Below, in pieces: positions 7,850 to 43,098 of a stretch of 64,000 nucleotides of DNA (its first letter is position 1; the number at the start of each line of letters is the position of its first letter). Origin of the DNA: Okamejei kenojei (Eukaryota); the NCBI GenBank assembly GCA_035221665.1, contig CM069151.1, positions 39,680,001 to 39,744,000 on the forward strand. The letters run 5' to 3'. A model generated the notes under the pieces. The model was not told the origin of the DNA. It searched no databases and worked only from the letters and a program-made list of their open reading frames with translations. Position numbers and translations under genes: made by a program.

Positions 7850-10830
7850 AATATGGTGTGCAAATGGGCCCAACCTACCCTTGTCCCAACATGTCCTATC
7901 AAGATTTGTCTAACTTGCTTGCGTTTGTTTGGCCCATATCCCTCTAAACCGGTCCTATCCACATACCAATCTAATTGCTCCTTAAACGTTGCTATAATCC
8001 CTGCCTCTACTATCTCCTCCAGCTGCTTGTTGCTTACACCCAGCACCCTTTGCCTGAAAATGTTATCCCTCAGATTCCTATAAAATCTTTTCCCCTTCAC
8101 CTTAAAACTATGCCCTTTGATTCTCGATTCCCCCACCCTGGGCTAGAAACTCTGTGTGTCCACCTGATGTATTCCTCTCATGATTTTATACACCTCTATC
8201 AGATCACTCCTCATCATCCTGCTCTCCAGGTAATAGAGTCCCAGACTGCGCAATCTTTCCCAACAGCTCAGATTCTCGAGTCCTGGCACCATTCTTGTAA
8301 ATCTTCTCTGCACCCTTTCCAACTAAACATCTTTTCTATGGCATGGTGTCCAGGACTGAATGCAATACTCTAGAAACATAGAAACATAGAAAATAGGTGC
8401 AGGAGGAGGCCATTCGGCCGTTCGAGCCAGTACCGCCATTCATTGTGATCATGGCTGATCGTCCGCTATCAATAACCCTTGCCTGCCTTCTCCCCATATC
8501 CCTTGACTCCACTAGCCCCTAGAGCTCTATCCAACTCTCCCTTAAATCCATCCAGTGATTTGGCTTCCACTGCCCTCTGTGGCAGGGAATTCCATAAATT
8601 CACAACTCTCAGGGTAAAAATCCTGGTCTAAATGAGGTCTCACTGATATCTTATATACAATGGCTTGCAAAAGTTTTCATACCGCTTGAACTTTCCACAT
8701 TTTGTTACGTTACAACCACAAACGTAAATGTATTTTATTGGGATTTTATGTGATAGACCAACACAAAGTGGTGCATAATTGTGAAGTGGAAGGAAAATGA
8801 TACATGGTTTTCAAATTTTTTTACAAATAAAAAACTGAAAAGTGTGGCGTGCAAAAGTATTCAGCCCCCTTTACTCTGATACCCCTAAATAAAATCCAGT
8901 GCAACCAATTGCCTTCAGAAGTCACCTAATTAGTAAATAGAGTCCACTTATGTTTAATCTAATCTCAGTATAAATACAGCTGTTCTGTGACGGCCTCAGA
9001 GGTTTGTCAGAGAACATTAGTGAACAAACAGCATCATGAAGCCCAAGGAACACACCAGACAGGTCAGGGATAAAGTTGTGGAGAAGTTTAAAGCAGAGTT
9101 AGGTTATAAAAAAATATCCCAAGCTTTGAACATCTCACGGAGCATTGTTCAATCCATCATCCGAAAATGGAAAGAGTATGGCACAACTGCAAACCTACCA
9201 AGACATGGACGTCCACCTAAACTGACAGGCCGGGCAAGGAGAGCATTGAAGCAGCCAAGAAGCCCATGGTAACTCTGGAGGAGCTGCAGAGATCCACAGC
9301 TCAGGTGGGAGAATCTGTCCACAGGACAGCTATTAGTCGTACACTCCACAAATCGGACCTTTATGGAAGAGTGGCAAGAAGAAAGCCATTGTTGAAACAA
9401 AGCCATAAGAAGTCCCGTTTGCAGTTTGCCATAAGCCATGTGGTGGAAGGTGCTCTGGTCTGATGAGACCAAAATCGAAGTTTTTGTCCTAAATGCAAAA
9501 CGCTATGTGTGGCGGAAAACTAACTCTGCACATCACCCTGAACACACCATCCCCACTGTGAAACATGGTGGTGGCATCATCATGCTGTGGGGATGCTTTT
9601 CTTCAGCAGGGACAGGGAAGCTGGTCAGAGTCGATGGGAAGATGGATGGAGCCAAATACAGGGCAATCTTGGAAGAAAACCTGTTAGAGTCTGCAAATGA
9701 CTTGAGACTGGGGCGGAGGTTCACCTTCCAGCTGGACAACGACCCTAAACATACAGCCAGAACTACAATGGAATGGTTTAGATCAAGGCATGTCCTTGTG
9801 TTAGAATGGCTCAGTCAAAGTCCAGACCTAAATCCAATTGAGAATCTCTGGCAAGACTGGAAAATTGTTGTTCACAGATGCTCTCCATCCAATCTGACTG
9901 AGCTTGTGCTATTTTGCAAGATAAATGGGCAAAGAAATTCAGTCTCTAGATGTGCACAGCTGGTAGAGACATACCCTGAAAGACTTGCAGCTGTAATTGC
10001 AGCGAAAGGTGGTTCTACAAAGTATTGACTCAGGGGGGCTGAATACTTTTGCACACCACACTTTTCAGTTTTTTATTTGTAATAAAATTTGGAAACCATG
10101 TATCATTTTCCTTCCACTTCACAATTATGCACCACTTTGTGTTGGTCTATCACGTTAAATCCCAATAAAATACATTTACACTTGTGGTTGTAACGTGACA
10201 AAATGTGGAAAAGTTCAAGGGGTATGAAAACTTTTGCAAGCCACTGTAATTGCAATATGACCTCCCAGGTTCTATACTCAATACTCTGACTGATGAAGGC
10301 CAATGTGTCAAAAGCCTTTTTCACTACCTTGACGCCACTTTCAAGGAATTATGTACCTGCACTTATAGGTCCCTCTGCTCTACAACAATTCACAGAGCCT
10401 GACCATTCACCGTGTAGGTCTTACCTATATTAGACTTTCCAAAATGCAACAACTGAAATGTTTCTGTATTAAATTTCATCAACCATTCCTGAGCCCACCA
10501 GGCCAACTGGTCAAGACCCTGCTGCAATTATTGACAACCAGCTTCACTATCTGCAACACCACCCACTTTTGTATCATCTGCAAATTTGTTAATCTTGCCA
10601 TGTACATACTCATGCAAATCATTGAAATAGATACCAAATAGTAATGGGTCCAGCACCGAACCCTGAGGCACACTACTAGTCACAGACCTCCAGTCCAAGA
10701 AGCAGCCTTCCCATCACCCTCTGCTCCTTCCAAGAAGCTAGTTTTCTATCCATTCAACTATCTCTCCTTGGATCCCATGTGATATAACCTTCCAGAACAG
10801 TCTACCATGTGGTATTGACTCATGCAAGTC
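7850..10830 (-). mobile_element. Decayed CR1-type LINE, interrupted by a younger CR1 tail (8371-8620) and the Tc1 element
   Basis: Minus-strand RT remnants (GESRIKGHSFKVKG; KKAFDTLAFISQSIEYR) continue on both sides of the insertions. Confidence 0.75.
8658..10246 (+). mobile_element. Tc1/mariner DNA transposon, Passport-like, full length with frameshifted DD34E transposase (9036-10028)
   Basis: ~210-bp TIRs (CAATGGCTTGCAAAAG... / ...CTTTTGCAAGCCACTG), TA on both sides, motifs GRPPKL, WSDETK, DNDPKH and SPDLNPIENLW; ORF split into three frames. Confidence 0.97.
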
Positions 10831-11139
10831 ATTGAGTATTGACATGCACTGAAGCACATGAGATCATCGGTCTTAGGATTACAATCCACAGGTCAAGGGT
10901 CCAGTGTTAGCCCAGCCGTGTCAACAGCAGTGCCCTCTGACAATAAAAGTCCATCCTGTGACCCTGGAGGATGTGGACCGTTTATTATTTCTCAGAGCCG
11001 TCTTCTGATGAAGGCAGATGTCTGTGATGACATTTCGCATCAACTTGGTTTGTTATCCATCGCTCCCGAGGCACTGTTCCTGAAGATTTGGAGAAGATGC
11101 TCAAAAAAGTAACTTGTTCTATTTTTAATCTTCAAGGCA

Positions 11140-11194
11140 ATGGAGTGTACATTGGAAAAGATGCTGTTGTCATTGCTACTGTTCCCGAGCTTGG
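11140..11194 (+). CDS. Ig-NLR exon 1: signal peptide MECTLEKMLLSLLLFPSL
   Basis: GCAATGG Kozak context, hydrophobic core, phase-1 donor G|GTGAGT. Confidence 0.8.
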
Positions 11195-14100
11195 GTGAGT
11201 GTTCATCTCAATGGGGAGATTGTGTACGTTTCTCATCCACTCGCTGGCTGCTTCTCACAAGTCATGAATCTGATCTTAGAGGCATTACGTTTCCTGTTTT
11301 ATTCATTGCCTAATTTAAGATTGAAGAGTAAACCCTTTGCTCAACAATATAACAAAGATTCTCACACAATTTTTCTTTCATTGCTTATTTGCCGATTGCG
11401 GTGACATTATTCTCCTGCTTTTACCTTAATTTCAATCCTAACATTCCTTTTTTCCCTTCATTTCATTTTGTAACTAAAGTAATATCTTGTAAAGTGTGAT
11501 ATAGCCAGTAGATGTGGAAACATGTCAGTGGATTGGATTTGTGACATGCTGGAAGCTATAGCGTACCACAGCCAGAGAGCAGTGCTGAACTACTATCTAC
11601 CTCGTTGGTGACCTTCAGACTTTCCTTGTTCGGACTTTGCTGGCTTTACCTTGCACTAAACGTTATTCCCTTGTACTGTACTATAATACACTGTAAATAA
11701 ACTGTACATTGTGTGGTTCAATTGTTATCATGTATTGTCTTTCTACTCACTGGATAGCATGCAACAAAAGGTTTTCACTGTACCTCAGTACCCACGCCAA
11801 TAAACTAAACTGAACTGAGTGATATTCGGTTGGAGGTAGATGACTCCAACTTTATCTGCAAGTTATCGCATGCGTTTTCATTTCCTCTATTTTCCCAGTT
11901 GAAGGTTCTTTCTCTCGATCCTATGGGATGTTGCATAGAGACATCTTGCTGCACTCCACTTTCCATGCTTCATCCAACTTCAATCTGAAGAATCTCATCA
12001 TCACATGGCAGCGGACAGACAGTCTCGCCGTGGTTTACAGTTTCTATTCTGGATCAGTCCATCCAGAGCATCACGACACAGCGTTCCTGGGCCGCACTCA
12101 AGTATTTCCTTTGGAATTCTCCAAAGGGAATGCGAGCCTGAAATTGGAAAGAATGTTGTTATCGGATGTGGGAAACTACACTTGCTTTGTAACTGTGGAC
12201 GATGGAATGCCACACATTGAGAACTTGGTGGAACTAAAATTAAATGGTGAGTGCATCGTGTGACAGATTGATCGATGATTTGTTGTGTAAATTTCACAGA
12301 GTTGTAAAGCACAGAAAGGGAATATTTTGGCCATCTCATGCCAATGCCATTCTCTGCCAATCCCATTTGTCTGCATTAGACCAGTATCATTCTCTGTCTT
12401 TCCCATCCAAGTACCTTTCCAAATGTCTTTCAAACATTATAATATTATCACCCTCTACTACCTCCTCCGGAAGCTCATCCCAGATATTATCATCCTGTGT
12501 GAAAACTTTCGCATCAGATCTCTTTTAAAAGTCTCCCCTCTCACCTTGAACTGGTCTTAGTCTCGACCCGCAATCTTATCTGTCCATTCCCCTCCGTGGA
12601 TGTCGAGTTTCTCCAACATTTTGTATTTTGATGCAGATTCCAGCATCAGTCACAACTTGCGTCTCCATTAAACCTGTGCCCTCTAGTTCTGGCACCCTGT
12701 GGAAAAAGATTCTGGCTATATCCCGTTGATATCCTATTTAAACTGGTAGGGGCAAAGTACTCTGTCGTGTGACATTCCAGTGAGTGAAAATCCAGCCTTT
12801 CCAATTTCTCATTATAATTACATTCCACTATTCTGGGCTACATGCTGCTGAATATCTTGTGAATGCTTTTACAATAACACTTCCTGTAACGTGGCAACTA
12901 GAACTGCACTCAGTGTTCCAAATGCAGTGTAAGCAGTGTTTAGTACAGCTCCAACATGATGTTCCAACTCTTGCAGTCATGGCCCTGGCCTATGAAAGCA
13001 AAGGGACCATTCCAATTTATGTTTTGCCTTCTCTGGTGATAGGTTTGGAAGTGCAAGTGAATAAGTGCCACATCTGGGAAGACTGTATCCCTGGACAGTG
13101 GGAAGGGAAGAGATGAAAAGGCAGGTTTTGCAACTTCTGTGGTTGCATGAGAGAGTGTCCCAAGCTTGGGAGCGATTGATCAATACAGAAGACCGGACCA
13201 GGGAAATGCATATAATGTAAAACAGTGCAGCACAGGAGCAGGACATTCGGCCCGTAATGTCCACGCCAAACATGTCAGGTTAAAATAACTGCCCTCTGCC
13301 TGCACTCAGAGTGATTCCTTCAAAATGCTGAAAAGGGAGGAGAGGAAATCAGTCTGAAGAAGGGTCTCGACCCGAAACGTCACCCATTCCTTCTCTCCAG
13401 AGATGCTGCCTGTCCTGCTGAGTTACTCCAGCATTTTGCGTCTATCTTCGATTTAAACCAGCATCTGCAGTTCTTTCCTACGCAGAGGAAAATATATGTT
13501 TGGTGGTCAAGTCTTGTTGGAGCTGTTGGAATTTGCAAAGATGATCCATTGAACGGAGAGGCAACTGGGTAGAAGGACAGATCCAGGGAACTCTGTTGTG
13601 TAGGAAGGAACTGCAGATGCTGGTTTAAACCGAAGATAGACACAAAAAGCTGGAGCAACTCAGTGGGTCAGGCAGCATCTCTGGAGCAAAGGAATAGGTG
13701 ACGTTTCAGATCGAGATCGTTCTCTTCAGCCTGTAATGTCAGTTTGTCGCTCGCCAATCCCCTGAACTGATGATAGAGATCCAGAAGGAGAATGGGAGAG
13801 TCGGATGCTGGAAATTGGAAGCAAAAAGGTAGGTATTTGAGTTGTGCCTGAGTGCAGGAAGCAGCACTGATATAATCGTTGATGTACCAGAAGAACAGTT
13901 GAGGGATGTGCCAGAGTTGCCCCCAAAACAGTGACAGCTCCCTATATCCCACAAAAAGACAGGCATAGCTTAGCCCATGTGAACGCACATAGCAGCACTG
14001 TTGATCTGGGGATTATGGTCATAGTCATTTGTGACAGGTTTGTATCGTGTTAGCACTTGTTGCTTCTAAAAAGTTGTATTCAAAATAGAAGACTTATACT

Positions 14101-17100
14101 TGCAATAAAAGGGTCAATCAGATTTTATCAATCCTGTTCCAAAATGTTAATTATAAAATTAATGACATTATACTAAATCTTGATTTGAAAGCGTGTTTTA
14201 GCTCAATTCTTAATTGAACACTAACCATTTGCTCTTTTGTGCTCTGAACATCGTAGATACATCGGAGAATAATGCATCCGATGGCATCGACCCAGCTTCA
14301 GAAAGGCACAAGCTTGTACTGCTACTTGCAGTGCTGCATGTTTTAACTGCCTGCACAGTTGGAATTGTGTTTTGGAAAATGAAAAACAAGAAGAAACCTG
14401 ATATTGAAGAGAGTGAGTAATATGTTTAAGATTTTGGCCATAATCACACAAACTGAATACCTATTCGAGAATGTGCTCCGAACACTCCAATGGGAAAGGA
14501 TTTCTAGGCACTTTCAGCCACAGTGTATATGACATCCTTTGAGAGGAACATTAACAAATGGTTTATTCTATTTCTTTTTCCAGGTATTCATTTACTGGCA
14601 GAAAATATAAAAGGTAAAGAACCAACCTCCATTGAGATTTTCTTAAGTTATGCTCCAGCATGGAGTAGTTTCCGCCCACAATAGTAGAAGTGGTCTCCTT
14701 GTCCACTACTGGAATCTGCCTTGGAATCAATCTTCAGAAGGGTGTGAAATAATTGTTTTTAGAATGTGGTCGTTGAATGAATAAAAAAATTAAATAATAA
14801 TGAATGTTGAAAGAAAGAACATACAAAATATAAATAAAATCCAGACATGTTTGAGCAAAGTATCTTGACAAGAAATTAATTTTATTCTTTTCAGGAAGCC
14901 CACCCAGTCTCACAACTCATTCAGCAGCTGTTTGACTTTTCAAGCCACATCAGGCTAGAATGGCAGATATCTGAAATTATTGATGCTGATGGATTTTTAC
15001 GGCAGTCCTGTCACTTCCTCATCACCATTACTGAGATTGTTTGAATCTTCAATTCCGCAGCTGCTGTGGTGGGATTTGGGCTGATGTCACTTGATCAATG
15101 GTCCAAGCCTCTAGATGTTAATCACTATGCCAGCATACTCCACTGCTTGCCCTACTCCCTACACAGCCTCATAGTTAACCTTGACACTATTGTAAATGGT
15201 TCGATCAGTGCCCCTTGGCTTGGTGTAATCATACGGTGACCAACCTAGAGTCCCACCAATATGTCCTGAATGGTACCCTAGTGTTGGGTGCAAGGATAGT
15301 TCCTTGTTTCTCACTCCCAAATCATGGATCCATTCTACGATGGAGTTGCATGCTGGAGGCCATAATCTAGCCATTGAGTATTATCTGGCAGGAGGATCGT
15401 CATTCTGCATCATCCCCACACACCCAGGAATCCCAAGTTCACCTTCAAACTGCATCAGATTTTGTTATGTGAAATATTTTCATAATATGGATATTTTGAA
15501 CTATGTAACAAAGTGCCAACCAAAAGCTGGTGTAGATGACGAATGGAAAATCTGCAAGATTTTAATACTTGTGTCAGCAGGGCATAGTGACCAACAATTG
15601 GCAAATGGAATAGTATAGATGGTTACTTGATGATTGACATGGACAAGGTGGGCTGAAGGGGCTGTTTCTGTGCTGCATAACTCTGACAAATTAAACCTGA
15701 AACGATGTGGGAATTCGTAAAGGGGATCAGCAACTTGATGGATATCTGATGCTCACAGTTCTCACATTTTGTTAATCCATGATAATAAAATTCTTACTCG
15801 TTCTGAGAAATGTATCTTTTTCTTCAGATGCCATTCAGAACTATAAAGGGTACATCTTGAAAGATAAAATGCATTTATGTTCATTAACACAACGGCGATT
15901 CGCAAACAATTCGCTTGCCAGAACCATCAATGTTACCAACCCGAAGGAACAAGACCCAGACGGTGATCTTATCAGGAGTGATGACTCAAATATTGCACAA
16001 GAAGTACAAATTTCACAACTGCTGTCTTTGCTTCAGGAAGAAAACTTCTCAAAGCGAGTCCTGCTGGTAGGTGATGCAGGAGTAGGGAAAAGTTGGACTG
16101 TTGTCAGCATGGAACAAGAGTGGGCATCTCAACCAACCCACACCTTGAGGAGCGTCTTGGTTCTCAGATTCCGTGACTTGAATGAGGTTAAAGGAAAGAC
16201 ATCTCTCCGGGATCTGCTCAAGAAGCATTGCACACCTTTGTCATCAGTCCTAACAGAACTCCTCTCGAACCCTCAAGATGTGTTAATCATTTTGGACGGG
16301 CTTGATGAATTCGCCCATCAGTTGCAATGGAATCCATCAGGCTGTGATTTCAACCTGGATAGTGAGGCTGAAGTAGGTGTTCTTGTTTCCAAACTAATAT
16401 CCAAGGACCTCCTTCGAGAAGCCCAGGTGTTGGTTACCTCCCGGTGGAATACCAAGCAGATAGAATTTAACCAGAAGTACTTTGATCGGCTTTTTGTCAT
16501 CTCTGGCTTTACCAATGATCAGTTGAAAAGATATTGTGAGGTGTTTTGTGGAGAGAAGCAAAAGGCGGAAGAAATGTATCAACGCATTACAGAGAATGCG
16601 ACCATCAAATGTCTGGCTTCCAATCCCCTCAACAGCTTCATTCTGTGCAATATTTTGGACAAGTGTACCAGCTCTCAACAAGTGCCTGCAAATGAACCAG
16701 TGACAAATAGCAAAATCTTTACATTGCTGCTGTACAGTCGGTTTAACTGCAGCATGCGTAAAGAAACAGACGCTGAGAATACGAGTGAAGAGGAGAAGGA
16801 ATTGTTTAAAGACACCATCCTGAAACTGGGAGAACTATCCTTCAACTCTCTGCTATCTGGGAAACTTAAGATAGATGTGACTGATCTGAAGACCTATGAC
16901 ATAGACCCAGACAGCCTTTCAAAATATCTCTCAAATCTTGTGCTGGACTGTAAATGCCAAGGAGTCTTTGAGTTCCACCATGCAGTGCTGAAGGAACAAT
17001 TTGCAGCTTTGTATTGTGCTACTTTACTCAAAAATGAAGCTGAAGAGTTGGTCAAGTGTCTGGATCTGTGGTGCTTTGGGAAAAGACCACTAAATCAAAT

Positions 17101-20100
17101 GAGCCAATTTTATTTGCAATCTTTTCAACCTGATCACACGGAGAAACTGTACAATTTTCTGAGGTTTCTCACTGGCTTCTTAACCGCAGGAAGGGATGGC
17201 AAGTTGTGGAACTATACAACTCCTCTCCCCCCTTCTACAGCCAGAGCTCTCACAACATGGTTCAAAAACAGCCTTCAGCAAGACATTAAGAAGGCAGAAT
17301 TGCTGAATTTGATGCATTGTCTCTTTGAACTGAATGATGCCAGTGTAACGGCTGAAGTATCTCCTTGCATCCAACATGTGGATTTTCACAACGTTTCTCT
17401 GAGCCCACTCGATCTGCGTGCTTTGTGCTACTGTCTCAATCGTACCACCGTGGAGGAGATGGATTTGAGGCACTGTAGCATTGGTGATAAAGGAATAAAG
17501 CAGCTCCAAGAAATACTAGTCAAGTGCAGAACTCTTCTGTGAGTAATGACTTTCAAAAGAATATTAAGCCCCAGTTGCACTAATCTACCTTCTTGCATGC
17601 TCAATGTTTGTCGGCATGTTTTATACTTTCTTTTGTCACATTTTATGCCCTGCATGTCCTGATTTATTCTATCCCACCTAATATTTGTGCCTGAAAGTCG
17701 TAATGAAATATATGCATATGGAGATATTACTCTTCAAGACTAAAATGGAAACAATGTGTGCAATCATCTCCCTCACCTACATTGTTCTGTCATAACCCTA
17801 CCCTCCTCCAATGTTGCCGTGTAGAGCCACAGAGCTGTAATGAGTCACAGAGCTGCATTGTAATAACCACAAGGGCAGGGATTTAATTATTTGCATTCAT
17901 TCTAATTGTTGCTCTTATGAATACATTTGCATTGATTAGCAATGTTACAAAATTTTGAGATTTAAAAAATCCAGTCTGCAATTTATCCCATCAGATAAAG
18001 CATTCATATCATCACTTTCATATCTTCAGTATTAAAAAAGTTATGGCCATTTTCATACTCGGAAATTAGCATCTTGTTCCCTATTGTTTTTCTATTGACT
18101 CAACACCAAAGCTGTGATCGAGGACAGTCAAAAGCCCATAACTTTCTTAAAAATTAAGAGAACTGAAACATATCGGCAGGAAAAATACTGCCGGTTCGTA
18201 TGTGGCCTAAATCACCTTTTCGCAACGTAAAATTTGGATTAAGGTAATCCTGAGAAGCACGTTTACATGTAAAATAAACGGCTTACGTTTAGCTGTCCCG
18301 TACGTGAAATCCGTCCTGTTGTCGGCGTTGACGGCATTAGAAGAGGATTTTTATTTTACTCCAGCGCTGAAATTGTCCCGCGGTTTAAAAAAAATAATTC
18401 ACAGAACGGCAGTCGGAACAATTCTTCAGCATTAGCTAGCACCCCGAGAAAATATATCTCGGACAGGCAGGGGAAAATTGCATTTTAACCCCGCCCCCCC
18501 CCCCCCCCCCCCCCCAAAGGCGCCAAAGTCGCGCACACGGCCAGTGGCAGACCGCTGAAGGTAAGTTTTGAAACACACCTACATTGATCTCTATAAAAAG
18601 ACTTGAGGACGGTTTACTTTACCTGCATACACCTGTTGGGGGTTTGATCTTCCTGTAAATCTTGCCCCACCGCATTTACAACACAGCAGTGTCAATGGAC
18701 TGGTATTCATGTATCTAGAGGAACAGCATCTCCTATCTCACCTGGGTGGTCTACAACCTAATGGTATGAACATCGAATTCACGTAACCCCTCTGTCTATT
18801 TGTTGTCTCCTGATACACCTAGGTTGTCTCACATGCCCCTTCTTTTCAAACCTAGCCCCTCTTACTCTCAGTTTCTGTAATCACCCTACCTCATCCCAAA
18901 TGATTCCATCAGTATGATTCCAACACCCACTTGATTTCCCTATTCCCTCCACTGCTCCCCTTTTGCCTGCCATCCCATCCTAATGTGGTTCCACTCACCA
19001 TTATCCTTTCTTATCAGATTCCATAATCTACAGTTCTTTGTACCCATTATCACCTGCCACCTCCTCAGCTTCAGGTTCATCTCAGCACTCCTCATCTGGA
19101 TCCACCTATTACTTAAGGGCACAAAGTGCTGGGGCAACTCAGCGGGTCAGGCAGCATCTCTGGAGAACACGGATCGCTGACGTTTCAGGTCGGGACCCAC
19201 TACAGACTGATCATCAGTTTGAAGAAGAATCCTGACATGAAACATCATCTATGACGTTCTCCAGAGATGCTGCCTGACCTGCTGAGTTACTACAGTGTAC
19301 TATAGTCTTTTGTGTAAATCGGCATCTGCAGTTCCTTGTTTCTACCTATCATTTGCCAGATCCTGCCTCTCGATCTCCCACTCACTTCTGTCCTGGCCAT
19401 ATCCCCTTTATGCTCTCAATTCTCGACCGCAAACATCGATGTCTCTCTGCCTCCACCGATGCTGCTTGACCCGCTGAGTTCTTCCACCACTTTGTTTTTG
19501 CTCCAGATTCCAGCGTTTGCTGTCTCTTGTATATCCAAATATCCAAACATTCATCATTACAAAAAAAGGTTGAATTGATTTTGTGTATTTGAAACTGCTC
19601 AAGCAGAAGCACAGGATCTCAACGATGTAATTATCTGGTCATTTTAAGCCTCATTTGCACTATTGTTCATAAGTCATTGCCCAGACACACGTGTTAGACC
19701 AAGGTTGGGCACTCTGCTCTCCCGGCAGTGCCACAACTGTTTATTTTGCAGCTGCCTTTGCAGGCAGCAGTTTGTGAGGCTTGTGTTCTGTCCCCAGGCA
19801 CTCGGGTCTCTAATTGTTTTCAACATCTTGTGTTTCCAGGGTAAGCTCCAACAAACTGACTGCAAAGTCAGCAAAGAATTTGAGTGCCATCCTTGAAGAC
19901 CCAAAGTGCAGGATTGAGACATTATCGTGAGATTTTTCATCACATAAATACTCTTGTAAAATTCTCCAAGTTTCTATAAAGCTTCTAATCCCTGACATTT
20001 GCCATTTGGTTCCGTTTTCAGGAGTGGTACAAACTCTTTAGGTTCGGCGGGAGCTCAGATTCTTTGGAAAGCTCTGGCAAGAAACAGAAGTCTCAAAATC

Positions 20101-21549
20101 CTTCGCCTGTATGACAATGGGATCACAGGTGAAGGCACAGAGAACATGAATCAGTACCTGACATTCAACAAAACTCTCCAGAAGCTCTAGTAAGTAGCTG
20201 GTAGATGTGAGTGCATAAGCAGTTTATTTGATAAATGCTCACACGGATTGGTTTGTGTGCAATTGTGTTGGCGTTGGTGAGTTTGAGACATGTTATGTAA
20301 ATGTGAAAATGTGGAAACAAGGCATGGCGGATGCTAGTTTACCAGGGAAAGACACAAAAAGCTGGAGTAATGCAGCGGGTCAGGCAGCATTCCTGGAGAA
20401 CATGGATAGGTGACGTTTTGGGACAAGACCCTTTGGTCAGACTGGTTAGTCTGAAGAAGTGTACTGACCTGCAAGTTTGATGAATTTGATTAATCTGATT
20501 GATCAATTCAGACTGATTAAACTGAAGAAGGGTCCCAACTAGTAACGTCATCTATCCATGTTCTCCAGGGATGCTGACTGACCCACTGAGTCAGTCTTTT
20601 TTTTCTTCTTTCCCAGTCTCCATGGGACCTTCTAGCACACAAGGAACACTGCTGTTCCAGATATGTCCATGTGTTTTTGTTTCAATGTGAAGGAGTGGCA
20701 AGAAAGGAACAAGGATTGAGAGTGCATTCTAACTGTGCATTTCAAGACTGTGGCTGAATCACCATTAGCATTGCACTAAGATTAGCTGGCAAAGATTACG
20801 CTTTTCGGAAGGAACCAGGCACATCCTACATTGAGTAATAAAAAAAAGAAACGAGATGTAGGTTTGGAAATATTTTAGATGAGTAAATAGTTTAGAAGGT
20901 CAAAGAAAATTAGGATATAGGGGAACTTTTGTTCAAATTTTCAAATGGGGTAATAATATTTGAAGAAGCATTTGCACGGATACGAGAAAGAGTAGAAGGA
21001 GTGAGCAAGTACAAACCTGCCTAAAGGTCTGCACAGTCATGATGCTGAATGGCCACTTCCTCATTGTAGAAGCTGATGGTTATTAAGTTAACGTGAATGA
21101 GATGGTTGGAATTTAAAATTCTGATTCCTAATTTAAATACGATTGAAGCATTTGCTAATGATCATTGCCTTGTTGCTTTCAGTTTATGTGCAAACAAACT
21201 TGATGACCTTGAACAGAAAAACATTCAAGAAGTCGCAAAGCTGTGTCACGGGCTAAAGGTCATCACTAAAATCCGAGACGATGAAGAGCTCTTACTCCGA
21301 GTTGAAAGTCAGGTTCAAATGCTTCCCTCCCATGAGCAGAGTTACGGCACAAAGTGGCTGCACAAACTATTGAAATCCATTCTGAAAGACCTGGGAGATG
21401 AGAGTACCATACCTGATCTAGACACTCGGGTAAGGATAGGAAAGATAAAAGCAAATATTAACAAATATCTTCAGAAGAACAAAGTGACAATGATTGATGT
21501 TCCAGACAATGAGAATGGGTTCCTTACTCCTGCAAATAACATAATATAA
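11140..21549 (+). CDS. Multi-exon type I membrane IgV-TM-NACHT-LRR protein (~973 aa; 8 coding exons)
   Basis: Exons 11140-11194, 11899-12246, 14257-14412, 14584-14613, 15828-17538, 19840-19926, 20022-20189 and 21183-21549; all introns GT-AG; phases 1,1,1,1,2,2,2 join into one open frame of 2922 nt. Confidence 0.8.
11899..12246 (+). CDS. Ig-NLR exon 2: B7/butyrophilin-family IgV domain
   Basis: Acceptor TTTCCCAG; IITWQR (C-strand Trp), GRTQVF, GNASLKL and DVGNYTCFV motifs; 348 nt, phase 1-1; donor G|GTGAGT. Confidence 0.93.
13350..13730. repeat. Inverted pair of Penelope-derived short terminal repeats (family recurs many times across the window)
   Basis: CTGAAGAAGGGTCTCGACCCGAAACGTCACC...GATGCTGCC...GAGTTACTCCAGCA in opposite orientations; similar pairs at ~19120-19340, 36440-36650 and 53990-54190. 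Confidence 0.75.
14257..14412 (+). CDS. Ig-NLR exon 3: stalk, transmembrane helix and basic stop-transfer sequence
   Basis: DTSENNASDGIDPASERHK-LVLLLAVLHVLTACTVGIVFW-KMKNKKK; 156 nt, phase 1-1; donor A|GTGAGT. Confidence 0.88.
14584..14613 (+). CDS. Ig-NLR exon 4: 30-nt juxtamembrane micro-exon (SIHLLAENIK)
   Basis: Strong acceptor TTTCTTTTTCCAG, donor AAG|GTAAAG, phase 1-1, open frame. Confidence 0.72.
14895..14935 (+). CDS. Candidate alternative terminal exon (GSPPSLTTHSAAV*) giving a short IgV-TM isoform
   Basis: Strong acceptor TTTTATTCTTTTCAG; read in phase 1 it stops after 13 codons. Confidence 0.35.
15828..17538 (+). CDS. Ig-NLR exon 5: NACHT NTPase, HD1, winged helix, HD2 and first LRRs
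   Basis: Walker A GDAGVGKS, Walker B VLIILDGLDEF, sensor-1 VLVTSR, SNPL, winged-helix FEFHHAVLKEQFAALY, LLNLMHCLFEL, LSPLDLRAL; acceptor TTTTTCTTCAG in phase 1; donor CT|GTGAGT. Confidence 0.95.
17938..18581. mobile_element. Probable non-autonomous DNA transposon in the NLR intron
   Basis: Imperfect terminal inverted match AGCAATGTTACAAAA / TTTTGAAACACACCT and a CpG-rich interior unlike the flanking intron; family not assigned. Confidence 0.4.
19840..19926 (+). CDS. Ig-NLR exon 6: LRR (VSSNKLTAKSAKNLSAILEDPKCRIETL)
   Basis: 87-nt phase 2-2 exon typical of RI-like NLR LRRs; acceptor TTTCCAG, donor TC|GTGAGA. Confidence 0.88.
20022..20189 (+). CDS. Ig-NLR exon 7: two LRRs (NSLGSAGAQILWKALARNRSLKILRLYDNGITGEG...)
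   Basis: 168 nt (2 x 84), phase 2-2; donor TA|GTAAGT. Confidence 0.92.
21183..21549 (+). CDS. Ig-NLR exon 8: last LRR, NLRX1-like C-terminal helical bundle and stop
   Basis: Acceptor TTGCTTTCAG in phase 2; YLCANKL LRR followed by KWLHKLLKSILKDLGD...IGKIKANINKYL; TAA at 21547-21549. Confidence 0.85.
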
Positions 21550-24500
21550 GATATAGGGTTGTTAGCACGCAATATTCAACATATTTTTATATTTCCTTAC
21601 GGTGATTGTATTTTATCAATGCGTCTTTTCTTCATTTCCCAACTAATTGGGAGCTAATTATGCAGGGTCGAGCACATCAGTGTCCAGTGACAGTAATTCC
21701 ATGTAATGTTGCCTTTTCTCAGAGAGTCTTTGCAGTGGCTACACTGACCATCAGTGTGGCCTTCAGCACTTCTTCCAGTAGAAACAAGTTGCCAAACATG
21801 TCTTCACATTCACTCAGTCTACCTTGGAGCACTTCCCAGATGAGAAAGTGTCCATTTCAACCAGGAGGTAAATGTTGCCAGTCTACAAATAATATGTGGC
21901 AGCATTTTGTTTGCAGTTTTAGAGAACAAGACTTAAGTGCAAATATGCTTTAAGTGTAGTGGAGCAGCTGATGCCACAGATGGTGCTGTCAAACACCTGT
22001 TTGGGGAAAAACATGTGCAAAAAAGTTGAAGTTAAAGTCAACATGTGTTCCCAGGTAGACTGTGAACGTGAAGAATGTTTCTCTGTCCAATATGTGTGAC
22101 ATTTCATAAAGCGAACCACTGTAAATAATGATTGAGTTCAATCTATCATTGTAATCAAATTGACAAGATATGACTGCACTATATGAAGGCATATTATTAT
22201 GGCTGTAGATGGAGGCAAACTAACAAGACACAGTGTTGATAGACACAAAATGCTGGAGTAACTCAGTGGGTCAGACAGCATCTCTGGAGTAGGTGACATT
22301 TTGGGTGGAGACCCTTTTTCAGACTGAGAGTCAGGAAAAGGAAACGAGGGATATAAATGGTGATGTATATGCATATCTTTCATTCATTTATTCTATATCT
22401 CACTACATCACAGTCTATATCACTCATTTCCCTTTCCCCTGATAGTCATGCACTGGTGAAGGACTGGTTGGTCATTGCACTTTGTTTGCTATGACTAGTA
22501 GTGATTGAGAAACAACACCTTGAGTAGAAAAGCAGCAAAAGTTAACGTGTAAGATTTTAGCTCAGCAAGTGTGAAAGGTATTGAGAACAGGAATTGTCAG
22601 GACAAGTTGTCATTTGAAGTTCAAAGCTGGTAGCTGGACCTGTTGTATTAAATGTGTTTACCTTCTGACAAACCTAAACGTCAATATTAACCAAGACTTC
22701 ATTTCCAAGCTGCTCCACAGACTTAAACTGATTGTATATAGATCCACAAATGACAACAGTAACGCAGATCATAATAGAAATGTAATGGCGTTTGGATAAT
22801 AAAATCATCATGTATTTTAATCTAAATCTAAATCACATTGGTAGTAGTAGGAGGGAGGATCAATTCATGGGGTGCATATGAGATGGTTTCTGAATCATTT
22901 TGTGGAGAAAGCAACAATGAACAGGCTATTTTAGATATGGGATACTGCAATGAGAAAGGGTTAAATTATCTAAGTGACCATTAGGGAAGAGAGATCATAA
23001 TAAGATAAAATTTTGTTCAAAGTTTAGTTCAATCTGAAGATAGTACCCAAACAGGGATAATATAAAAATCACGAGCATTAGGGATGAGGTGGCCTGGTAG
23101 GTTGGGAAACACCATTGATAATTATAACAATAAACAAGCAATAAAATAAACAATAAAAAATTACCACATAGTTTACTTGTGATATTTATATCTTTCTTTG
23201 TGGAATAAAATGTATCCAATTATAACCGTGAGAAAGATAACAATATGTCAAAGGAAAGTGTTTATGTTATTCAATAAAGCTGTAAGCTTGAGGTTTGGGA
23301 ACGTCATTAGGCACATGGACATGTAGGGAATGGAGGGATATGGATCACATACAATCAGAGGAGAATAGTTTAATTTGGAATCGTAATCATGATCATGAAC
23401 AAAGGGCCTGTTCCTGTGTTTTACTGTTCCACGTTCTAAAACCGCTAGTCATGAAATAAATGCTTTATGTACTTCAAAGGTAAGACCAAGGTATTGGCAA
23501 TGAAAAGGTGGGGAGACTGTAAGAATAGCTGAGAGATAAATATCCTGTAAGAGTTTCTAAAGGTACATAAAGAGGAAAATATTAGTGGAAATTAAGGTGA
23601 AAACACTTTGCAGGCGTTAAAGAAAACTTTAAAACACACCACCAAGATCAGGCAAGGCAATCAAGACTTTATTAAGAGCATCAAATACAGTGATCAGTGG
23701 GAGGAGTTTCTCCCTGAACAAAGATTCATCTACTTCTTATATACTGAATTTTGATTTGTTATGTTGTTTACTGTAGCAGGCACTTATGCACTTTTCCTTC
23801 TGCTGAATGATCTTATAACAATTTTACTTCGGAGTCACGTGAGTGACTACGTGAAGAAGCCCCGCCTGGCGCATGATCGGCATTACGTCGACGCTGACGG
23901 CAGAGCAAGAGCTGCAGAGGCAGCTCCTCTACAGCGGTAAGTACAGGCCCACAGGTAAGTGCAGTTGAAATACTTACAGGGCATATCCAAACTCCGTGGC
24001 TGGTGTATAGAGCCACCAGGTGTTAAAAAGAAATGGAATTTAAAAGCAAAAAATAAAATAAAAGTTAAAATGAAAAGAAAATACAGATATACGGTGGAAA
24101 AAACGGAGTTTAAAAAGCGTCCCAGGGGAAAACTCAGCGATCGGGATGGCAGATTAAGTGATGAGCCGGTTCCGATACCGGTGGCCGTTAAAATTACCGT
24201 TAGGGAGACTTTAGTTGCTCCACAAACTTTTGGCTATAAGGAAAAACGGAGTTTAAAAGTTAAAAAGAAAAGAAAATACTCCGGGGGAAAAAATGGAGTA
24301 TAAAAGTTAAAAAGGAAAATAAATACTCCGGGTGAAAAAAAAGGAGTTTAAAAGTTAAAATGAAAAGAAAAAACTCCAGTGGGAAGGAAAAAATTTAAAA
24401 AAGTCAGAGAGGCCATGTTTTAAAAAGTTCTAATAAAAAGGCCTCCAGACAAAAAAGCTTTATGGCTTAAAATTAATGGAGAAAGACTCCAAAAATAAAA

Positions 24501-28100: not shown

Positions 28101-29016
28101 TTCGTCTGCCTGCCACTTTTACTTTTCACCTTGCTACCTAATGCTTCTACCCTCATTTTACACCCTCCTGCCTCTCTGCTCTTGTACCCATCCCCCTGCC
28201 ACATTAGTTTAAATCCTCCCCGACAGCACTAGCAAACACTCCCCCAAGAACATTGGTTCCATTCCATTCCAGGTGCAAACCGTCCTGTTTGTACCGGTCC
28301 CACCTCCCCCAGAACTGGTCCCAGTGCCCTAAAAATTTGAATCCCTCCCCCTTGCACCACTTTTCAAGCCACGTATTCATTTGCATTATCCTCCTATTTC
28401 TACTCTGACTGGCCCGTGGTACTGGTAGTAATCCGGAGATTACTACCTTTGAGGTCCTACTTTTAAGTTTATCTCCTAGCTCCCTAAATTCACCTTGTAG
28501 GACCTCATCCCTTTTTTTACCTATATCGTTGGTGCCAACATGCACCACGACAACTGGCTGTTCACCCTCCCCCTCCAGAATGTTCTGCAGCCGTTCAGTG
28601 ACATCCCTGACCTTTGCACCAGGGAGGCAACATACCATCCTGGAGTCTCGTTTGCGGCCGCAGAAACGCCTATCTATTCCCCTGACAATTGAATCCCCTA
28701 TTACTATTGCCCTTCCCCTCTTTTTTCCCCCATCATGTGCTGCAGAGCCACCCATGGTGCCATGAACCTGGCTGCTGCTGCATTCCCCTGATGAGCTATC
28801 TCCCTCAACAGTATCCAAAATGGTATACCTGTTTAGGAGGGAGATGACCGCAGGGGACTCCTGCACTACCTGCCTACTGCTTTGCTGGCTATTGGCCACC
28901 CGTTCCCTTCTTGTCCTCTTACCTTTTGCCTGCGGTGTGACCAACTCACTGTACGTGCTATCCACGACTTTCTCCGCATTGTGGATGCTCCAGTATGAAT
29001 CCAGCCGCAGTTCCAA
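25141..29016 (-). mobile_element. Near full-length young CR1 LINE nested in the DIRS element: ORF1 (SGNH/GDSL esterase) and ORF2 (APE endonuclease + RT) with one frameshift
   Basis: ORF1 28204-29016 (IVIGDSIVR, VHVGTND, DGLHL); ORF2 with [52 protein letters not shown]; short deletion near 26990 relative to the copy at ~50470; (GAAACATA)n tail. Confidence 0.97.
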
Positions 29017-42427: not shown

Positions 42428-43098
42428 CCTAGTTCTATCCTACACAATAGGGACAATTTACAGAAGCCAATTAACCAACAAACCTGCATGTCCTTGGAAT
42501 GTCGAAGGAAACTGGAGCACCCAGAGAAAACCCACACGGTCACAGGGAGAACATACAAGCTCTATACAGACAGCGCCCATAGTCAGGATCTTGACGCTGT
42601 AAGACAGTGTGCAGTGTGGGATTGACGATCGGAATTGGATGGGTGGGTCAAAGGACCTTTTCTGTGCTATACAACCCTAATAGTCTGAAATGTTGCACAA
42701 AGCATAGGGTTTTGGCCCTAGAGAAGAGTAGGTGCCTGGGTGTTGCTTCGTGTTGTTCCAGTGCCCATTCTCAGCATGGAGAACATAAGAAAGTGGTTGA
42801 GGTGAGGGGTAGGAGGTATAGTGAGAGATGTTTTGACTCAAAGCTGAGAATTTTGGAGTATCTCATGGTTGTGAATGGTGTGGAAAAGAGGAATCCCTCT
42901 GCACCAGTCTGGGCACTGTAAATAATTGTTCTGATGTATATTGTTACAGTATGTTACATAATGAAAGTGTGGGAAAGTGAGTTGTGAGGATGACAAAAGG
43001 GCGACACAAAGAGGCAAAAAAAAAGGGTGCGCATGGCCAAAGATTGTGTTAATGTGAGAAAATGTGGGATCGTCCAATTTTGTGCTTTGTTGTTACAG

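What the first reader, a model, noticed from the sequence alone, without database searches (positions are those of the whole stretch)
11140..21549. Cell-surface NLR: signal peptide, B7-type IgV and TM helix spliced in frame to a cytoplasmic NACHT-LRR
Seen in sequence: eight exons with canonical GT-AG sites join into one 973-aa frame. The large NACHT exon has no PYD/CARD/BIR upstream, and its strong acceptor (15827) is in phase 1, matching the phase-1 donors of the Ig/TM exons only 1.2-1.4 kb upstream. N-glycosylation sequons (NAS, NYT, NAS) lie before the TM and a KMKNKKK stop-transfer sequence follows it. Established: vertebrate NLRs are cytosolic with an N-terminal death-fold or similar effector; B7-family IgV proteins are surface ligands/receptors; butyrophilins couple IgV-TM to a cytosolic B30.2 sensor. 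Inference: this is a type I membrane receptor in which an NLR ATPase switch is wired to an extracellular Ig domain. It could signal inside-out (the cytosolic LRR senses danger, NACHT oligomerises and clusters a B7-like ligand for lymphocytes, as BTN3A does) or outside-in. I know of no characterised vertebrate protein with this architecture.
Basis: partly seen in the sequence, partly recalled or inferred. Interest (0 to 1): 0.97.

Follow-up and report, generated by a model that had tools for sequence, protein, structure and literature searches.

The report
Membrane-anchored NLR with B7-like ectodomain
This skate gene really is spliced into one mRNA that puts a B7-H3-like immunoglobulin domain and a membrane anchor in front of a complete NOD-like-receptor ATPase, and the same undescribed design is conserved from sharks to alligators, so a "cytosolic" innate sensor appears to be wired through a membrane in many non-mammalian vertebrates.

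Summary
**Observation: confirmed.** The eight GT-AG exons (11140-21549, + strand) join into an open 973-aa frame.

- **Transcript evidence.** In four RNA-type runs of the same organism, from two studies, contigs join exon 1 > IgV > TM > 30-nt exon > NACHT at the predicted junctions.
- **Domains.**
  - The IgV is closest to B7-H3 and B7-H4.
  - The cytosolic part is a full NOD module with intact ATPase motifs and about 7 LRRs. It ends in a C-terminal three-helix bundle.
  - There is no CARD, PYD or BIR domain.
- **Conservation.** At least 51 public gene models carry IgV > TM > NACHT. They come from elasmobranchs, gar, lungfish, caecilian, salamanders, frogs and alligator. Their NACHT regions form one clade together with two N-terminally truncated models. 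The family is therefore ancient and under selection. I saw it in no teleost, bird or mammal.
- **Sorting motif.** An acidic dileucine motif follows the TM in 24 of 28 members.
- **Short isoform.** An alternative terminal exon (14895-14935) gives a short IgV-TM isoform.
- **Literature.** Seven searches found no vertebrate description. The nearest characterised analogue is the sea-cucumber membrane NLR AjNLRC4.
- **Odd allele.** This genome's allele carries Ser in place of the canonical first Ig cysteine.

The architecture is about 95% sure. The mechanism I favour, inside-out clustering of a B7-like ectodomain, is inference at about 40%. Membrane topology and localisation were not tested. I rate it a new variant of a known kind, of high interest.

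The parts
11137..11194 (+). First coding exon. The ATG is at 11140. It encodes MECTLEK + MLLSLLLFPSL, a signal-peptide-like n- and h-region. The donor is phase 1. An acceptor AG at 11135-11136 shows that a 5' non-coding exon lies further upstream.
   Evidence: Sequence. The joint 11193>11898 (GT..AG) is present in all four runs. The contig match stops at about 11137, while the contigs carry about 280 more 5' letters. The N-terminus is conserved in P0001 and P0002.
11899..12246 (+). IgV exon (phase 1-1) of B7-H3/B7-H4 type, with sequons NAS and NYT. Codon 38 (11955-11957) is Ser in this assembly, where orthologues and other individuals have the canonical Cys.
   Evidence: V-set 23.9 bits. CD276 IgV about 1e-12 per domain and VTCN1 3e-12. 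Variant 11956 C>G in runs X1-X3. Cys45 of P0001 is conserved in at least 90% of 34 family members, and W62 and N103 are invariant.
14257..14412 (+). Exon (phase 1-1) encoding the stalk (NAS sequon), the single TM helix LVLLLAVLHVLTACTVGIVFW, the KMKNKKK stop-transfer sequence and the start of the acidic dileucine motif.
   Evidence: This is the only 19-residue window with Kyte-Doolittle score above 1.6; the peak is 2.6 at aa 154. AlphaFold models a helix at 164-183 in orthologue P0001. Joints 12245>14256 and 14412>14585.
14584..14613 (+). 30-nt mini-exon (phase 1-1) encoding SIHLLAENIK. It completes the motif EESIHLL, which fits [DE]xxxL[LI].
   Evidence: Joints on both sides in all four runs. 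The motif is present 9-19 residues after the TM in 24 of 28 family members.
14895..14935 (+). Alternative terminal exon. Spliced after exon 4 it adds GSPPSLTTHSAAV and a stop, giving a short IgV-TM isoform of about 210 aa without the NLR.
   Evidence: A canonical acceptor precedes it. 10 of 12 residues are identical to the tail of P0123, a 214-aa protein that represents a cluster of 5 sequences from short assembled contigs of public runs of a related skate. The splice itself was not listed for this organism's runs.
15828..17538 (+). Large exon (phase 1 in, 2 out). It encodes the juxtamembrane helix, NBD (Walker A GDAGVGKS, Walker B LIILDGLDE, sensor-1 TSR), HD1, WHD (conserved His), HD2 and the first LRR.
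   Evidence: Pfam NACHT 3e-25, NLRC4_HD2 2e-16 and NOD2_WH 1e-4. PDB sequence hits NLRP3 1e-17 and NOD2 1e-14. Joint 14611>15826 GT..AG. Foldseek on the orthologue model gives NOD2 2e-30.
19840..19926 (+). LRR exon (87 nt, phase 2-2).
   Evidence: tblastn of P0001 and P0002, 86% identity. Canonical sites and the only frame-preserving combination.
20022..20189 (+). LRR exon (168 nt, phase 2-2).
   Evidence: tblastn 91-93% identity. LRR_6 hit. Frame check.
21183..21549 (+). Last exon, encoding the final LRR and a C-terminal three-helix bundle, then the stop.
   Evidence: tblastn 74-87% identity. AlphaFold pLDDT 86 with helices 34-53, 56-70 and 79-104. The best structural match is the NLRX1 C-terminal bundle, Z 8.6, but it does not stand clear of generic bundles.

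Best explanation
This is one intact, expressed gene for a type I membrane NLR.

**Architecture.**
- A cleavable signal peptide and a single glycosylated B7-H3/B7-H4-like IgV domain lie on the extracellular or luminal side.
- One TM helix follows, with a polybasic stop-transfer sequence.
- A juxtamembrane acidic dileucine motif (EESIHLL) probably routes the protein between the plasma membrane and endosomes through AP adaptor complexes.
- On the cytosolic side sits a complete NOD module: NBD-HD1-WHD-HD2, about 7 LRRs and a three-helix cap. There is no CARD, PYD or BIR domain.
- It belongs to an ancient single-clade gnathostome family, seen in elasmobranchs, gar, coelacanth, lungfish, amphibians and crocodilians.

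**Most likely mechanism (inference).**
- The design follows ordinary NLR logic: C-terminal LRR as sensor and autoinhibitor, NACHT as nucleotide-driven oligomerisation switch, N-terminal domain as effector.
- Here the effector position is filled by the IgV-TM unit.
- A cytosolic cue sensed by the LRR/NACHT would therefore oligomerise the protein in the membrane and cluster the B7-like ectodomains.
- The clustered ectodomains would form a high-avidity ligand for a conserved host counter-receptor. This is inside-out signalling, as in BTN3A1.
- A short IgV-TM isoform from an alternative terminal exon could dilute or tune that display.
For: **Shown.**
- The frame and splice sites hold.
- Spliced contigs join exons 1-5 in four runs. 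Exon depth is 10-100 against about 0-9 in the introns.
- The IgV is closest to CD276 and VTCN1.
- NACHT, WH and HD2 are found by Pfam, and the ATPase motifs are intact.
- The AlphaFold model of the 93%-identical orthologue has an IgV, a TM helix and a NOD2-like module with 7 LRR strands.
- 51 models carry IgV>TM>NACHT. The clade has SH-aLRT support of 100.
- The nearest paralogue group (sister at SH-aLRT 94, inside the 100-supported complementary split) carries a CARD at the same position in the one member where Pfam finds an N-terminal domain.
- All N-terminal exons are phase 1-1, as expected of shuffled IgSF exons.
- The dileucine motif is present in 24 of 28 members.

**Bearing on the mechanism.**
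- No cytosolic effector domain was found.
- Between cartilaginous and bony vertebrates, the IgV (39% identity) and the LRR (44%) are better conserved than the NACHT (27%). That fits conserved host partners on both sides of the membrane.
- The butyrophilin precedent for inside-out signalling is established knowledge, not a test done here.
Against: - Topology, glycosylation and localisation are predicted, not measured. No SignalP or TMHMM-type tool was available.
- No ligand, counter-receptor or cytosolic trigger is known.
- The only characterised analogue, AjNLRC4, is reported to work outside-in as a phagocytic receptor (PMC8699970).
- Single-IgV type I proteins are more often receptors than ligands.
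- This genome's allele lacks the canonical first Ig cysteine, which could weaken the ectodomain.
- Contigs cannot give isoform ratios or tissue of expression.
- The 3' junctions (exons 5-8) rest on orthologue alignment, not on reads of this organism.
Confidence: 0.4

Rival explanations
1. Outside-in receptor. The IgV binds an extracellular or luminal ligand, microbial or host. That clusters the protein, drives NACHT oligomerisation and dileucine-mediated internalisation, and starts a cytosolic response or phagocytosis. This is what is reported for sea-cucumber AjNLRC4.
For: - AjNLRC4 has an extracellular Ig, a TM and an intracellular NACHT. It binds bacteria and drives actin-dependent uptake (PMC8699970).
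- The conserved endocytic-type motif lies next to the TM.
- The single-IgV ectodomain resembles receptors of the CD28, NKp30 and TREM type. This rests on my own knowledge.
- The IgV exon shows more within-species differences than the NACHT exon: 9 of 348 nt against 10 of 1175 nt, with 5 of the 8 IgV differences that were listed by position being non-synonymous.
Against: - No cytosolic effector domain is present to pass a signal on.
- The IgV is deeply conserved, which is not the pattern of a pathogen-chasing receptor.
- The LRR, the usual sensor, is the best conserved part.
- Homology with AjNLRC4 was not tested, and AjNLRC4 lacks LRRs.
Confidence: 0.3
2. Compartment-tethered regulatory NLR. 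The SP-IgV-TM unit mainly serves as an address and anchor, as the mitochondrial presequence does for NLRX1. It would hold a non-inflammasome, NLRC3/NLRX1-like regulator on endosomal or plasma membranes, where it scaffolds or damps signalling.
For: - There is no death-fold domain. The nearest relatives are annotated 'NLRC3-like'.
- The top structural match of the C-terminal bundle is the NLRX1 C-terminal bundle, residues 906-970: Z 8.6, rmsd 2.3 A over 64 residues.
- A sorting motif is conserved.
Against: - A mere anchor would not need a B7-type IgV conserved at 39% over more than 400 My, with an invariant Trp and N-glycan site.
- The NLRX1 match is tied with generic three-helix bundles at Z 8.0-8.1, and there is no sequence match.
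Confidence: 0.2
3. Not one functional gene. The linkage would be a read-through or chimeric transcript of a B7-like gene and a neighbouring NLR gene. Alternatively the intron-less contigs come from a processed retrocopy, or the locus is decaying in this species because of the lost Ig cysteine.
For: - Two runs are labelled only 'RNA?' and one 'probably DNA'.
- A short IgV-TM isoform exists.
- An intron-4-retaining contig is present in X19.
- There is an in-frame ATG at 15779 upstream of the NACHT exon.
- Ser replaces the canonical Cys in the assembly and in X19.
Against: - The same joined architecture appears in at least 51 models across about 450 My, and their NACHT regions form one clade.
- All junctions are canonical and in frame, and the 973-aa frame is open with intact motifs.
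- Exon depth far exceeds intron depth in all runs, which DNA or a retrocopy alongside its parent gene would not give.
- X19 shows no differences in the 1175 nt of the NACHT exon that were laid (15826-17000) and shares the joints.
- Other individuals carry the Cys, so the Ser is an allele and not a species-wide loss.
Confidence: 0.03

Closest known systems
AjNLRC4, membrane NLR of the sea cucumber Apostichopus japonicus (PMC8699970; related AjNLR-new, PMC13133943)
   Same: It has an extracellular Ig domain or domains, a transmembrane segment and an intracellular NACHT, with no CARD or PYD. It is the only characterised Ig-TM-NACHT protein I found. Membrane localisation was shown experimentally.
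   Different: It is an echinoderm protein with two Ig-type domains and two predicted TM segments, and no LRR. Its Ig is not reported as B7-type. It is reported to bind bacteria and actin. I did not hold its sequence, so common descent versus independent domain shuffling was not tested.
Butyrophilins (BTN3A1, BTN2A1)
   Same: They are type I proteins with a B7-superfamily IgV ectodomain, a single TM helix and a cytosolic sensor domain. They are the established example of inside-out signalling to lymphocytes. The IgV exon matches BTN3A1 and BTN3A3 at about 4e-6 to 1e-5.
   Different: Butyrophilins have IgV plus IgC and a B30.2/SPRY tail. This protein has IgV only, followed by a NACHT-LRR ATPase switch.
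B7-H3 (CD276) and B7-H4 (VTCN1)
   Same: They are the closest relatives of the IgV exon by sequence, at about 1e-12 per B7-H3 IgV domain and 3e-12 for B7-H4. The shared motif is GNASL...SDxGxYxC.
   Different: B7-H3 and B7-H4 carry IgV-IgC units and short cytoplasmic tails, with no ATPase.
Canonical cytosolic NLRs (NOD2, NLRP3, NLRC3-type)
   Same: They share the NBD-HD1-WHD-HD2-LRR module. Foldseek gives NOD2 (ADP-bound) at 2e-30 and NLRP3 at 3e-27. The Walker A/B, sensor-1 and WHD His motifs are present.
   Different: The N-terminal CARD or PYD is replaced by signal peptide, IgV and TM. The protein is predicted to be membrane-integral. It has only about 7 LRRs and an extra C-terminal helical bundle.
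NLRX1
   Same: It is an NLR whose N-terminus is a targeting signal and not a death-fold domain. Its LRRs are followed by a C-terminal helical bundle, which is the top VIA-align match of the last exon (3un9 residues 906-970, Z 8.6).
   Different: It uses a mitochondrial presequence, not a secretory signal with IgV and TM. There is no detectable sequence similarity in the tail, and the structural match is not above generic bundles.
Teleost NLR-C / NLR-B30.2 family
   Same: It is a lineage-restricted vertebrate NLR family made by fusing an NLR to a domain otherwise found in butyrophilin or TRIM proteins (PMC4852459).
   Different: The B30.2 is C-terminal and cytosolic, and there is no TM or ectodomain. 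It sits in a different NACHT clade.

Membership tests
NLR (NACHT-LRR STAND ATPases) | NACHT NTPase domain with Walker A, Walker B and sensor 1 | tested here: met
   Pfam NACHT 89 bits against a cut-off of 26.7. GDAGVGKS, LIILDGLDE and VTSR are read in the translation.
NLR (NACHT-LRR STAND ATPases) | Winged-helix and helical domains (WHD, HD2) after the NBD | tested here: met
   NLRC4_HD2 61 bits against a cut-off of 33.1. NOD2_WH 22.7 bits, just under its cut-off of 23.1. The orthologue model superposes on NOD2 and NLRP3.
NLR (NACHT-LRR STAND ATPases) | C-terminal leucine-rich repeats | tested here: met
   Weak LRR_6 hits in the exons; LRR_6 reaches its cut-off in P0001. The AlphaFold model has 7 LRR strands.
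NLR (NACHT-LRR STAND ATPases) | N-terminal death-fold or BIR effector domain and a soluble cytosolic protein | tested here: not met
   No CARD, PYD or BIR by Pfam in any exon or in the orthologues. Transcripts splice the IgV-TM exons directly to the NACHT exon. A TM helix is predicted.
B7 / butyrophilin family | B7-type IgV domain | tested here: met
   CD276 about 1e-12 per domain, VTCN1 3e-12, BTN3A and PD-L1 weaker. In this allele the first canonical Cys is Ser.
B7 / butyrophilin family | Membrane-proximal IgC domain after the IgV | tested here: not met
   The IgV exon is spliced directly to the stalk/TM exon. No C1-set or C2-set hit was found in P0001, P0291 or P0292.
B7 / butyrophilin family | Type I membrane topology (signal peptide, one TM, N-glycans outside) | tested here: inconclusive
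   Hydropathy, sequon positions and the positive-inside rule all fit, and AlphaFold models a helix there. No dedicated predictor or experiment was available.
B7 / butyrophilin family | Butyrophilin-type cytosolic B30.2 domain | tested here: not met
   No SPRY or PRY hit.
Echinoderm AjNLRC4-type membrane NLR | Extracellular Ig, TM, intracellular NACHT | tested here: met
   The domain order is the same here by prediction. The AjNLRC4 architecture is taken from PMC8699970.
Echinoderm AjNLRC4-type membrane NLR | Common descent (sequence homology beyond the shared domains); absence of LRR | not tested
   The AjNLRC4 sequence was not on hand. This family has LRRs whereas AjNLRC4 lacks them, so the architecture differs in that respect.
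NLRX1-like NLR | LRR followed by the NLRX1-type C-terminal three-helix bundle | tested here: inconclusive
   By sequence there is no hit. By fold, 3un9 is top with Z 8.6, rmsd 2.3 A over 64 aa, but generic bundles reach Z 8.0-8.1.

The most novel reading that the evidence does not exclude
Jawed vertebrates ancestrally had a direct link between innate cytosolic sensing and lymphocyte co-signalling. In it, an NLR switch uses a B7-H3-like ectodomain as its effector. Activation in the cytosol oligomerises the protein and displays a clustered B7-type ligand to a conserved orphan receptor. One candidate is a CD28-family member such as CD28X, which is likewise present in sharks, rays, gar, turtles and crocodilians and absent from teleosts and mammals (PMC11599192). 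Mammals would have lost this link and kept only the butyrophilin version of the same idea.
Probability: 0.2. Interest if true: 0.95.

Novelty: new variant of a known kind. Interest (0 to 1): 0.82.

Why it matters
Vertebrate NLRs are taught as soluble cytosolic sensors whose N-terminal death-fold domain recruits caspases or kinases. This family puts a B7-type immunoglobulin ectodomain and a membrane span at the effector position. It has kept that design from sharks to crocodilians.

- **A new signalling mode.** The design implies one not represented in mammals. Either an NLR reports cytosolic danger on the outside of the cell, or a surface or endosomal receptor uses a STAND ATPase as its transducer.
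- **Orphan checkpoint molecules.** B7-H3 and B7-H4, whose receptors are still unknown, gain an evolutionary relative.
- **A testable pairing.** Orphan CD28-family receptors that were lost in mammals become candidate partners.
- **Convergence.** It gives a vertebrate counterpart to the echinoderm membrane NLR.
- **Tractable models.** Axolotl, Pleurodeles, frogs and gar carry the gene, so the function can be tested by knockout.

Tried and rejected
- **The look-up of encoding contigs was closed.** I could not inspect the 3341-nt contig behind P0001 or any synteny.
- **The joined 973-aa model was not searched.** All searches were exon by exon by reference. Full-length work used the public orthologue P0001.
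- **Last exon against PDB by sequence:** no hit. Foldseek gave nothing at E <= 0.001.
- **NLRX1 kinship** stays unproven.
- **FISNA domain:** not detected upstream of the NACHT.
- **Rfam on 10500-22500:** nothing.
- **Second word-indexed protein search, with gar P0018:** only 5 hits at E <= 1e-40, so it is uninformative on teleosts.
- **Seven literature searches** found no vertebrate description. The whale-shark NLR survey does not mention the architecture.
- **Retrocopy or DNA-contamination reading of the spliced contigs:** rejected on the contrast between exon and intron depth.
- I could not check junctions 5-8, the alternative-exon splice or the 5' UTR exon in this organism.
- **Complex prediction was not used,** because no specific binding pair is claimed.
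- **The search of earlier findings by words:** blank.

Full report
**1.

I read the region and recomputed the model. The eight + strand exons are 11140-11194, 11899-12246, 14257-14412, 14584-14613, 15828-17538, 19840-19926, 20022-20189 and 21183-21549.
- All have canonical AG/GT boundaries.
- They join into 2922 nt, or 973 aa, with no internal stop.
- Exons 2, 3 and 4 are phase 1-1. The NACHT exon is entered in phase 1 and left in phase 2. The LRR exons are phase 2-2.
- The sequons NAS, NYT, NDT and NAS (aa 96, 111, 134, 140) precede the only strongly hydrophobic segment, aa 154-174, with a Kyte-Doolittle peak of 2.6. KMKNKKK follows it.

I assembled the joined protein only inside scripts for these checks. 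Searches were done exon by exon by reference, and full-length analyses used a public orthologue.

**2. What the pieces are**

- **NACHT exon.** It scores NACHT 89 bits, NLRC4_HD2 61 bits and NOD2_WH 22.7 bits. It carries Walker A GDAGVGKS, Walker B LIILDGLDE, sensor-1 TSR and the winged-helix His.
- **IgV exon.** It reaches only 23.9 bits on Pfam V-set, against a cut-off of 26. Against PDB sequences it clearly matches the IgV domains of B7-H3/CD276 (about 1e-12 each) and B7-H4/VTCN1 (3e-12). BTN3A, MOG and PD-L1 score far lower. "B7-type IgV" is therefore correct and can be narrowed to B7-H3/H4-like.
- **Cytosolic module by sequence.** It is nearest to NLRP3, NLRP6 and NOD2, at 1e-17 to 1e-14 only. 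It is a branch of its own.
- **Death-fold domains.** No CARD, PYD, BIR, FISNA or B30.2 was found.

**3. The exons are joined in RNA**

The NACHT exon is held by runs of the window's organism. X19 holds 100% of the sampled words, and X1-X4 hold 76%. I laid X19, X1, X2 and X3 on 11100-17000.
- All four runs show the joints 11193>11898, 12245>14256 and 14611>15826 (each GT..AG), and 14412>14585.
- In X1, X2 and X3, single contigs of 3015, 4055 and 4131 nt run with continuous record coordinates through the IgV exon, the TM exon, the 30-nt exon and at least 1175 nt of the NACHT exon.
- Exon depth is 10-100, while most intron bins are 0-9. This is RNA, not genomic DNA or a retrocopy sitting beside its parent gene.
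- X19 also has a low-depth contig (9 against 100) running unspliced from 14585 to 15855. That is pre-mRNA or intron retention.
- The match to exon 1 stops at an acceptor at 11137, and the contigs carry about 280 further 5' letters. At least one non-coding exon therefore lies upstream.
They rest on colinear tblastn matches of orthologues P0001 and P0002 and on the frame check.

**4. It is a conserved family, not a one-off**

- **First search, with the NACHT exon alone.** It returned proteins of about 810-1000 aa from Rhinoraja, Pristis, Narcine, Mobula, Hemitrygon, Hypanus, Pristiophorus, Heterodontus, Mustelus, Scyliorhinus, Stegostoma and Chiloscyllium. These are 56-85% identical, and nearly all carry V-set plus NACHT. 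P0001, a 982-aa protein from a 3341-nt assembled contig, is 93% identical. Gar and salamander proteins with V-set plus NACHT came at 31-34%.
- **Exhaustive profile-free search with P0001, with names.** It added frogs of many families, a caecilian, axolotl, African lungfish and both alligators. It also added a partial turtle model and a coelacanth model that fuses the 3' end of one copy to the IgV-TM of the next.
- **Domain order.** A script found the order IgV > hydrophobic helix > NACHT in 51 models, 36 of which also have the same C-terminal tail.
- **Tree.** On a tree of the NACHT region, all IgV-TM proteins form one group with SH-aLRT 100. Two N-terminally truncated models sit with them. 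The branching roughly follows the species tree.
  - The nearest other group holds frog NLRs and teleost "NLRC3-like" proteins. It is sister at SH-aLRT 94, inside the 100-supported complementary split.
  - The one frog member scanned carries a CARD at the same position.
- **Absences.** I saw no teleost, bird or mammal member among the best 150 representatives. That is an absence of evidence only.

**5. Family features**

- **Ectodomain.** The Ig Cys pair, an invariant Trp and the invariant N of GNASL are conserved.
- **Linker.** The distance from the TM to Walker A is about 76-141 residues.
- **Sorting motif.** Within 9-19 residues of the TM, 24 of 28 members have [DE]xxxL[LIV].
  - Examples are EESIHLL here, EKAPLL, EKMPLL and EKTPLL in sharks, EGVPLI in gar and DQEALL in salamanders.
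  - In the window the motif spans the exon 3/4 junction. That gives the 30-nt mini-exon a purpose.
  - By established knowledge this is the AP-complex acidic dileucine signal of proteins such as tyrosinase and LIMP-II. Its function here is inferred.
- **Conservation by domain.** Between cartilaginous and bony vertebrates, identity is IgV 39%, LRR 44%, NACHT 27%, HD2 30% and TM 14%.
- **Full-length model.** AlphaFold on P0001 with a 34-sequence alignment gave pLDDT 79.
  - It shows an IgV (29-140, pLDDT about 90), a disordered stalk and a TM helix (164-183).
  - A juxtamembrane helix (188-213), a NOD module, 7 LRR strands and terminal helices (889-955) follow.
  - Foldseek's best matches are ADP-bound NOD2 (2e-30) and closed NLRP3.
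- **C-terminal tail.** The last exon modelled alone (pLDDT 86) is a three-helix bundle.
  - Its top VIA-align match is the C-terminal bundle of NLRX1: 3un9 residues 906-970, Z 8.6, rmsd 2.3 A over 64 residues.
  - Generic bundles follow at Z 8.0-8.1, and there is no sequence match.
  - The NLRX1 resemblance noted earlier in this scan is compatible but unproven.

**6. Isoforms and alleles**

- **Short isoform.**
  - The alternative terminal exon proposed in another note of this scan (14895-14935) has a good acceptor. In phase 1 it encodes GSPPSLTTHSAAV followed by a stop.
  - P0123 is a 214-aa protein that represents a cluster of five sequences from short assembled contigs of public runs of a related skate. 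It is SP-IgV-TM-exon 4 followed by GSPSSLTAHSAA and a stop, identical at 10 of 12 residues.
  - A short B7-like isoform that keeps the dileucine motif is therefore conserved. Its splice was not among the joints listed for this organism.
- **The Ser38 allele.** At 11956 the assembly and X19 have C (Ser38). X1-X3 have G (Cys38), which is the canonical first Ig cysteine present in at least 90% of the family. This genome thus carries an expressed allele without the canonical disulfide.
- **Other variation.**
  - X1-X3 also lack 6 nt in frame in the TM exon.
  - The IgV exon differs from X1-X3 at 9 of 348 nt. Of the 8 differences listed by position, 5 are non-synonymous.
  - The NACHT exon differs at 10 of 1175 nt, 5 of them non-synonymous.
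  - With only three haplotypes this is a hint and not a test.

**7. How it probably works**

What is shown is one mRNA, the domain order, intact ATPase motifs and deep conservation. The type I topology is inferred with good support.

Inferred mechanism:
- Tripartite NLRs place the sensor at the C-terminus, the switch in the middle and the effector at the N-terminus. Oligomerisation brings the effectors together.
- Here the effector slot holds IgV-TM, and no other effector domain exists.
- I therefore favour inside-out signalling, at about 0.4. In this reading a cytosolic cue drives NACHT oligomerisation in the membrane. That oligomerisation produces clustered B7-like ectodomains, which are read by a conserved host receptor, as with BTN3A1.
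- High conservation of both the IgV and the LRR fits this reading.

Alternatives:
- Outside-in reception with dileucine-driven uptake, as reported for AjNLRC4 (PMC8699970), is the main rival at about 0.3.
- A compartment-tethered regulatory NLR is third, at about 0.2.
- Read-through, retrocopy or pseudogene readings are about 0.03.

**8. Comparison with what is known, and novelty**

- Seven full-text searches found no description of a vertebrate IgV-TM-NACHT protein. The whale-shark NLR survey does not mention it.
- Public annotation pipelines have predicted these proteins under generic names such as "NLRP1 homolog" and "NLRC3-like". The sequences are therefore catalogued, but the architecture is unremarked.
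- The closest characterised system is echinoderm AjNLRC4/AjNLR-new. It has a different Ig type and number and no LRR. Its relationship to this family is untested.
- A paper on CD28-family receptors reports orphans such as CD28X in sharks, rays, gar, turtles and crocodilians, but not in teleosts or mammals (PMC11599192). I take this only as a lead for a counter-receptor.

Noticed in passing
window 11955-11957 (codon 38): The assembly and run X19 read TCC (Ser) where runs X1-X3 read TGC (Cys). Cys is the canonical first Ig-fold cysteine, conserved in at least 90% of the family. This is an expressed allele without the canonical disulfide.
   Followed up: partly
window 12110 and 12112: All four runs, including the otherwise near-identical X19, read C where the assembly has T. 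The changes are P89P and L90S, and S90 is also the orthologue state. This is either a haplotype difference or a small assembly error in the IgV exon.
   Followed up: no
window 14347-14353: Runs X1-X3 lack 6 nt in frame inside the TM exon, relative to the assembly and X19. This is a length polymorphism of the membrane span or stalk.
   Followed up: no
window 14585-15855: Run X19 has a 1272-nt contig running unspliced from exon 4 through intron 4 into the NACHT exon, at about a tenth of the exon depth. It is either intron retention (read-through would end the protein at 14684) or pre-mRNA.
   Followed up: partly
window 13267-13857 and 11494-11887 (introns 2 and 1): Summed contig depth in all four runs is extremely high, up to 10^5, with many internal joints. 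These look like high-copy transcribed repeats, SINE or LINE-like. Rfam finds no known RNA family there.
   Followed up: partly
P0168 (Narcine bancroftii), P0238 (Cololabis saira), P0196 (Metynnis): Other gene models combine Ig ectodomains with NLRs outside this clade. Narcine has V-set + C1-set + TM + NACHT. Cololabis has V-set + Ig + TM + PYD + FISNA + NACHT-LRR. They are either independent Ig-NLR fusions or read-through models.
   Followed up: partly
P0134 (Latimeria chalumnae): This coelacanth model joins NACHT and C-terminal tail to a following IgV-TM. That suggests tandem copies of the gene fused by annotation. Frogs also show at least two clades of copies.
   Followed up: no
window 9438-10028; 25242-29016; 39929-42558; 49467-50662; 55980-59635: These regions hold a Tc1/mariner-type transposase ORF and several LINE-type endonuclease/reverse-transcriptase ORFs on both strands. 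The gene sits in repeat-rich DNA, with an assembly gap or masked stretch at 52471-52794.
   Followed up: no
window 15779-15827: An in-frame ATG lies 49 nt upstream of the NACHT-exon acceptor, inside intron 4. It could start an NLR-only protein from an unspliced or internally initiated transcript. No evidence for or against was obtained.
   Followed up: no
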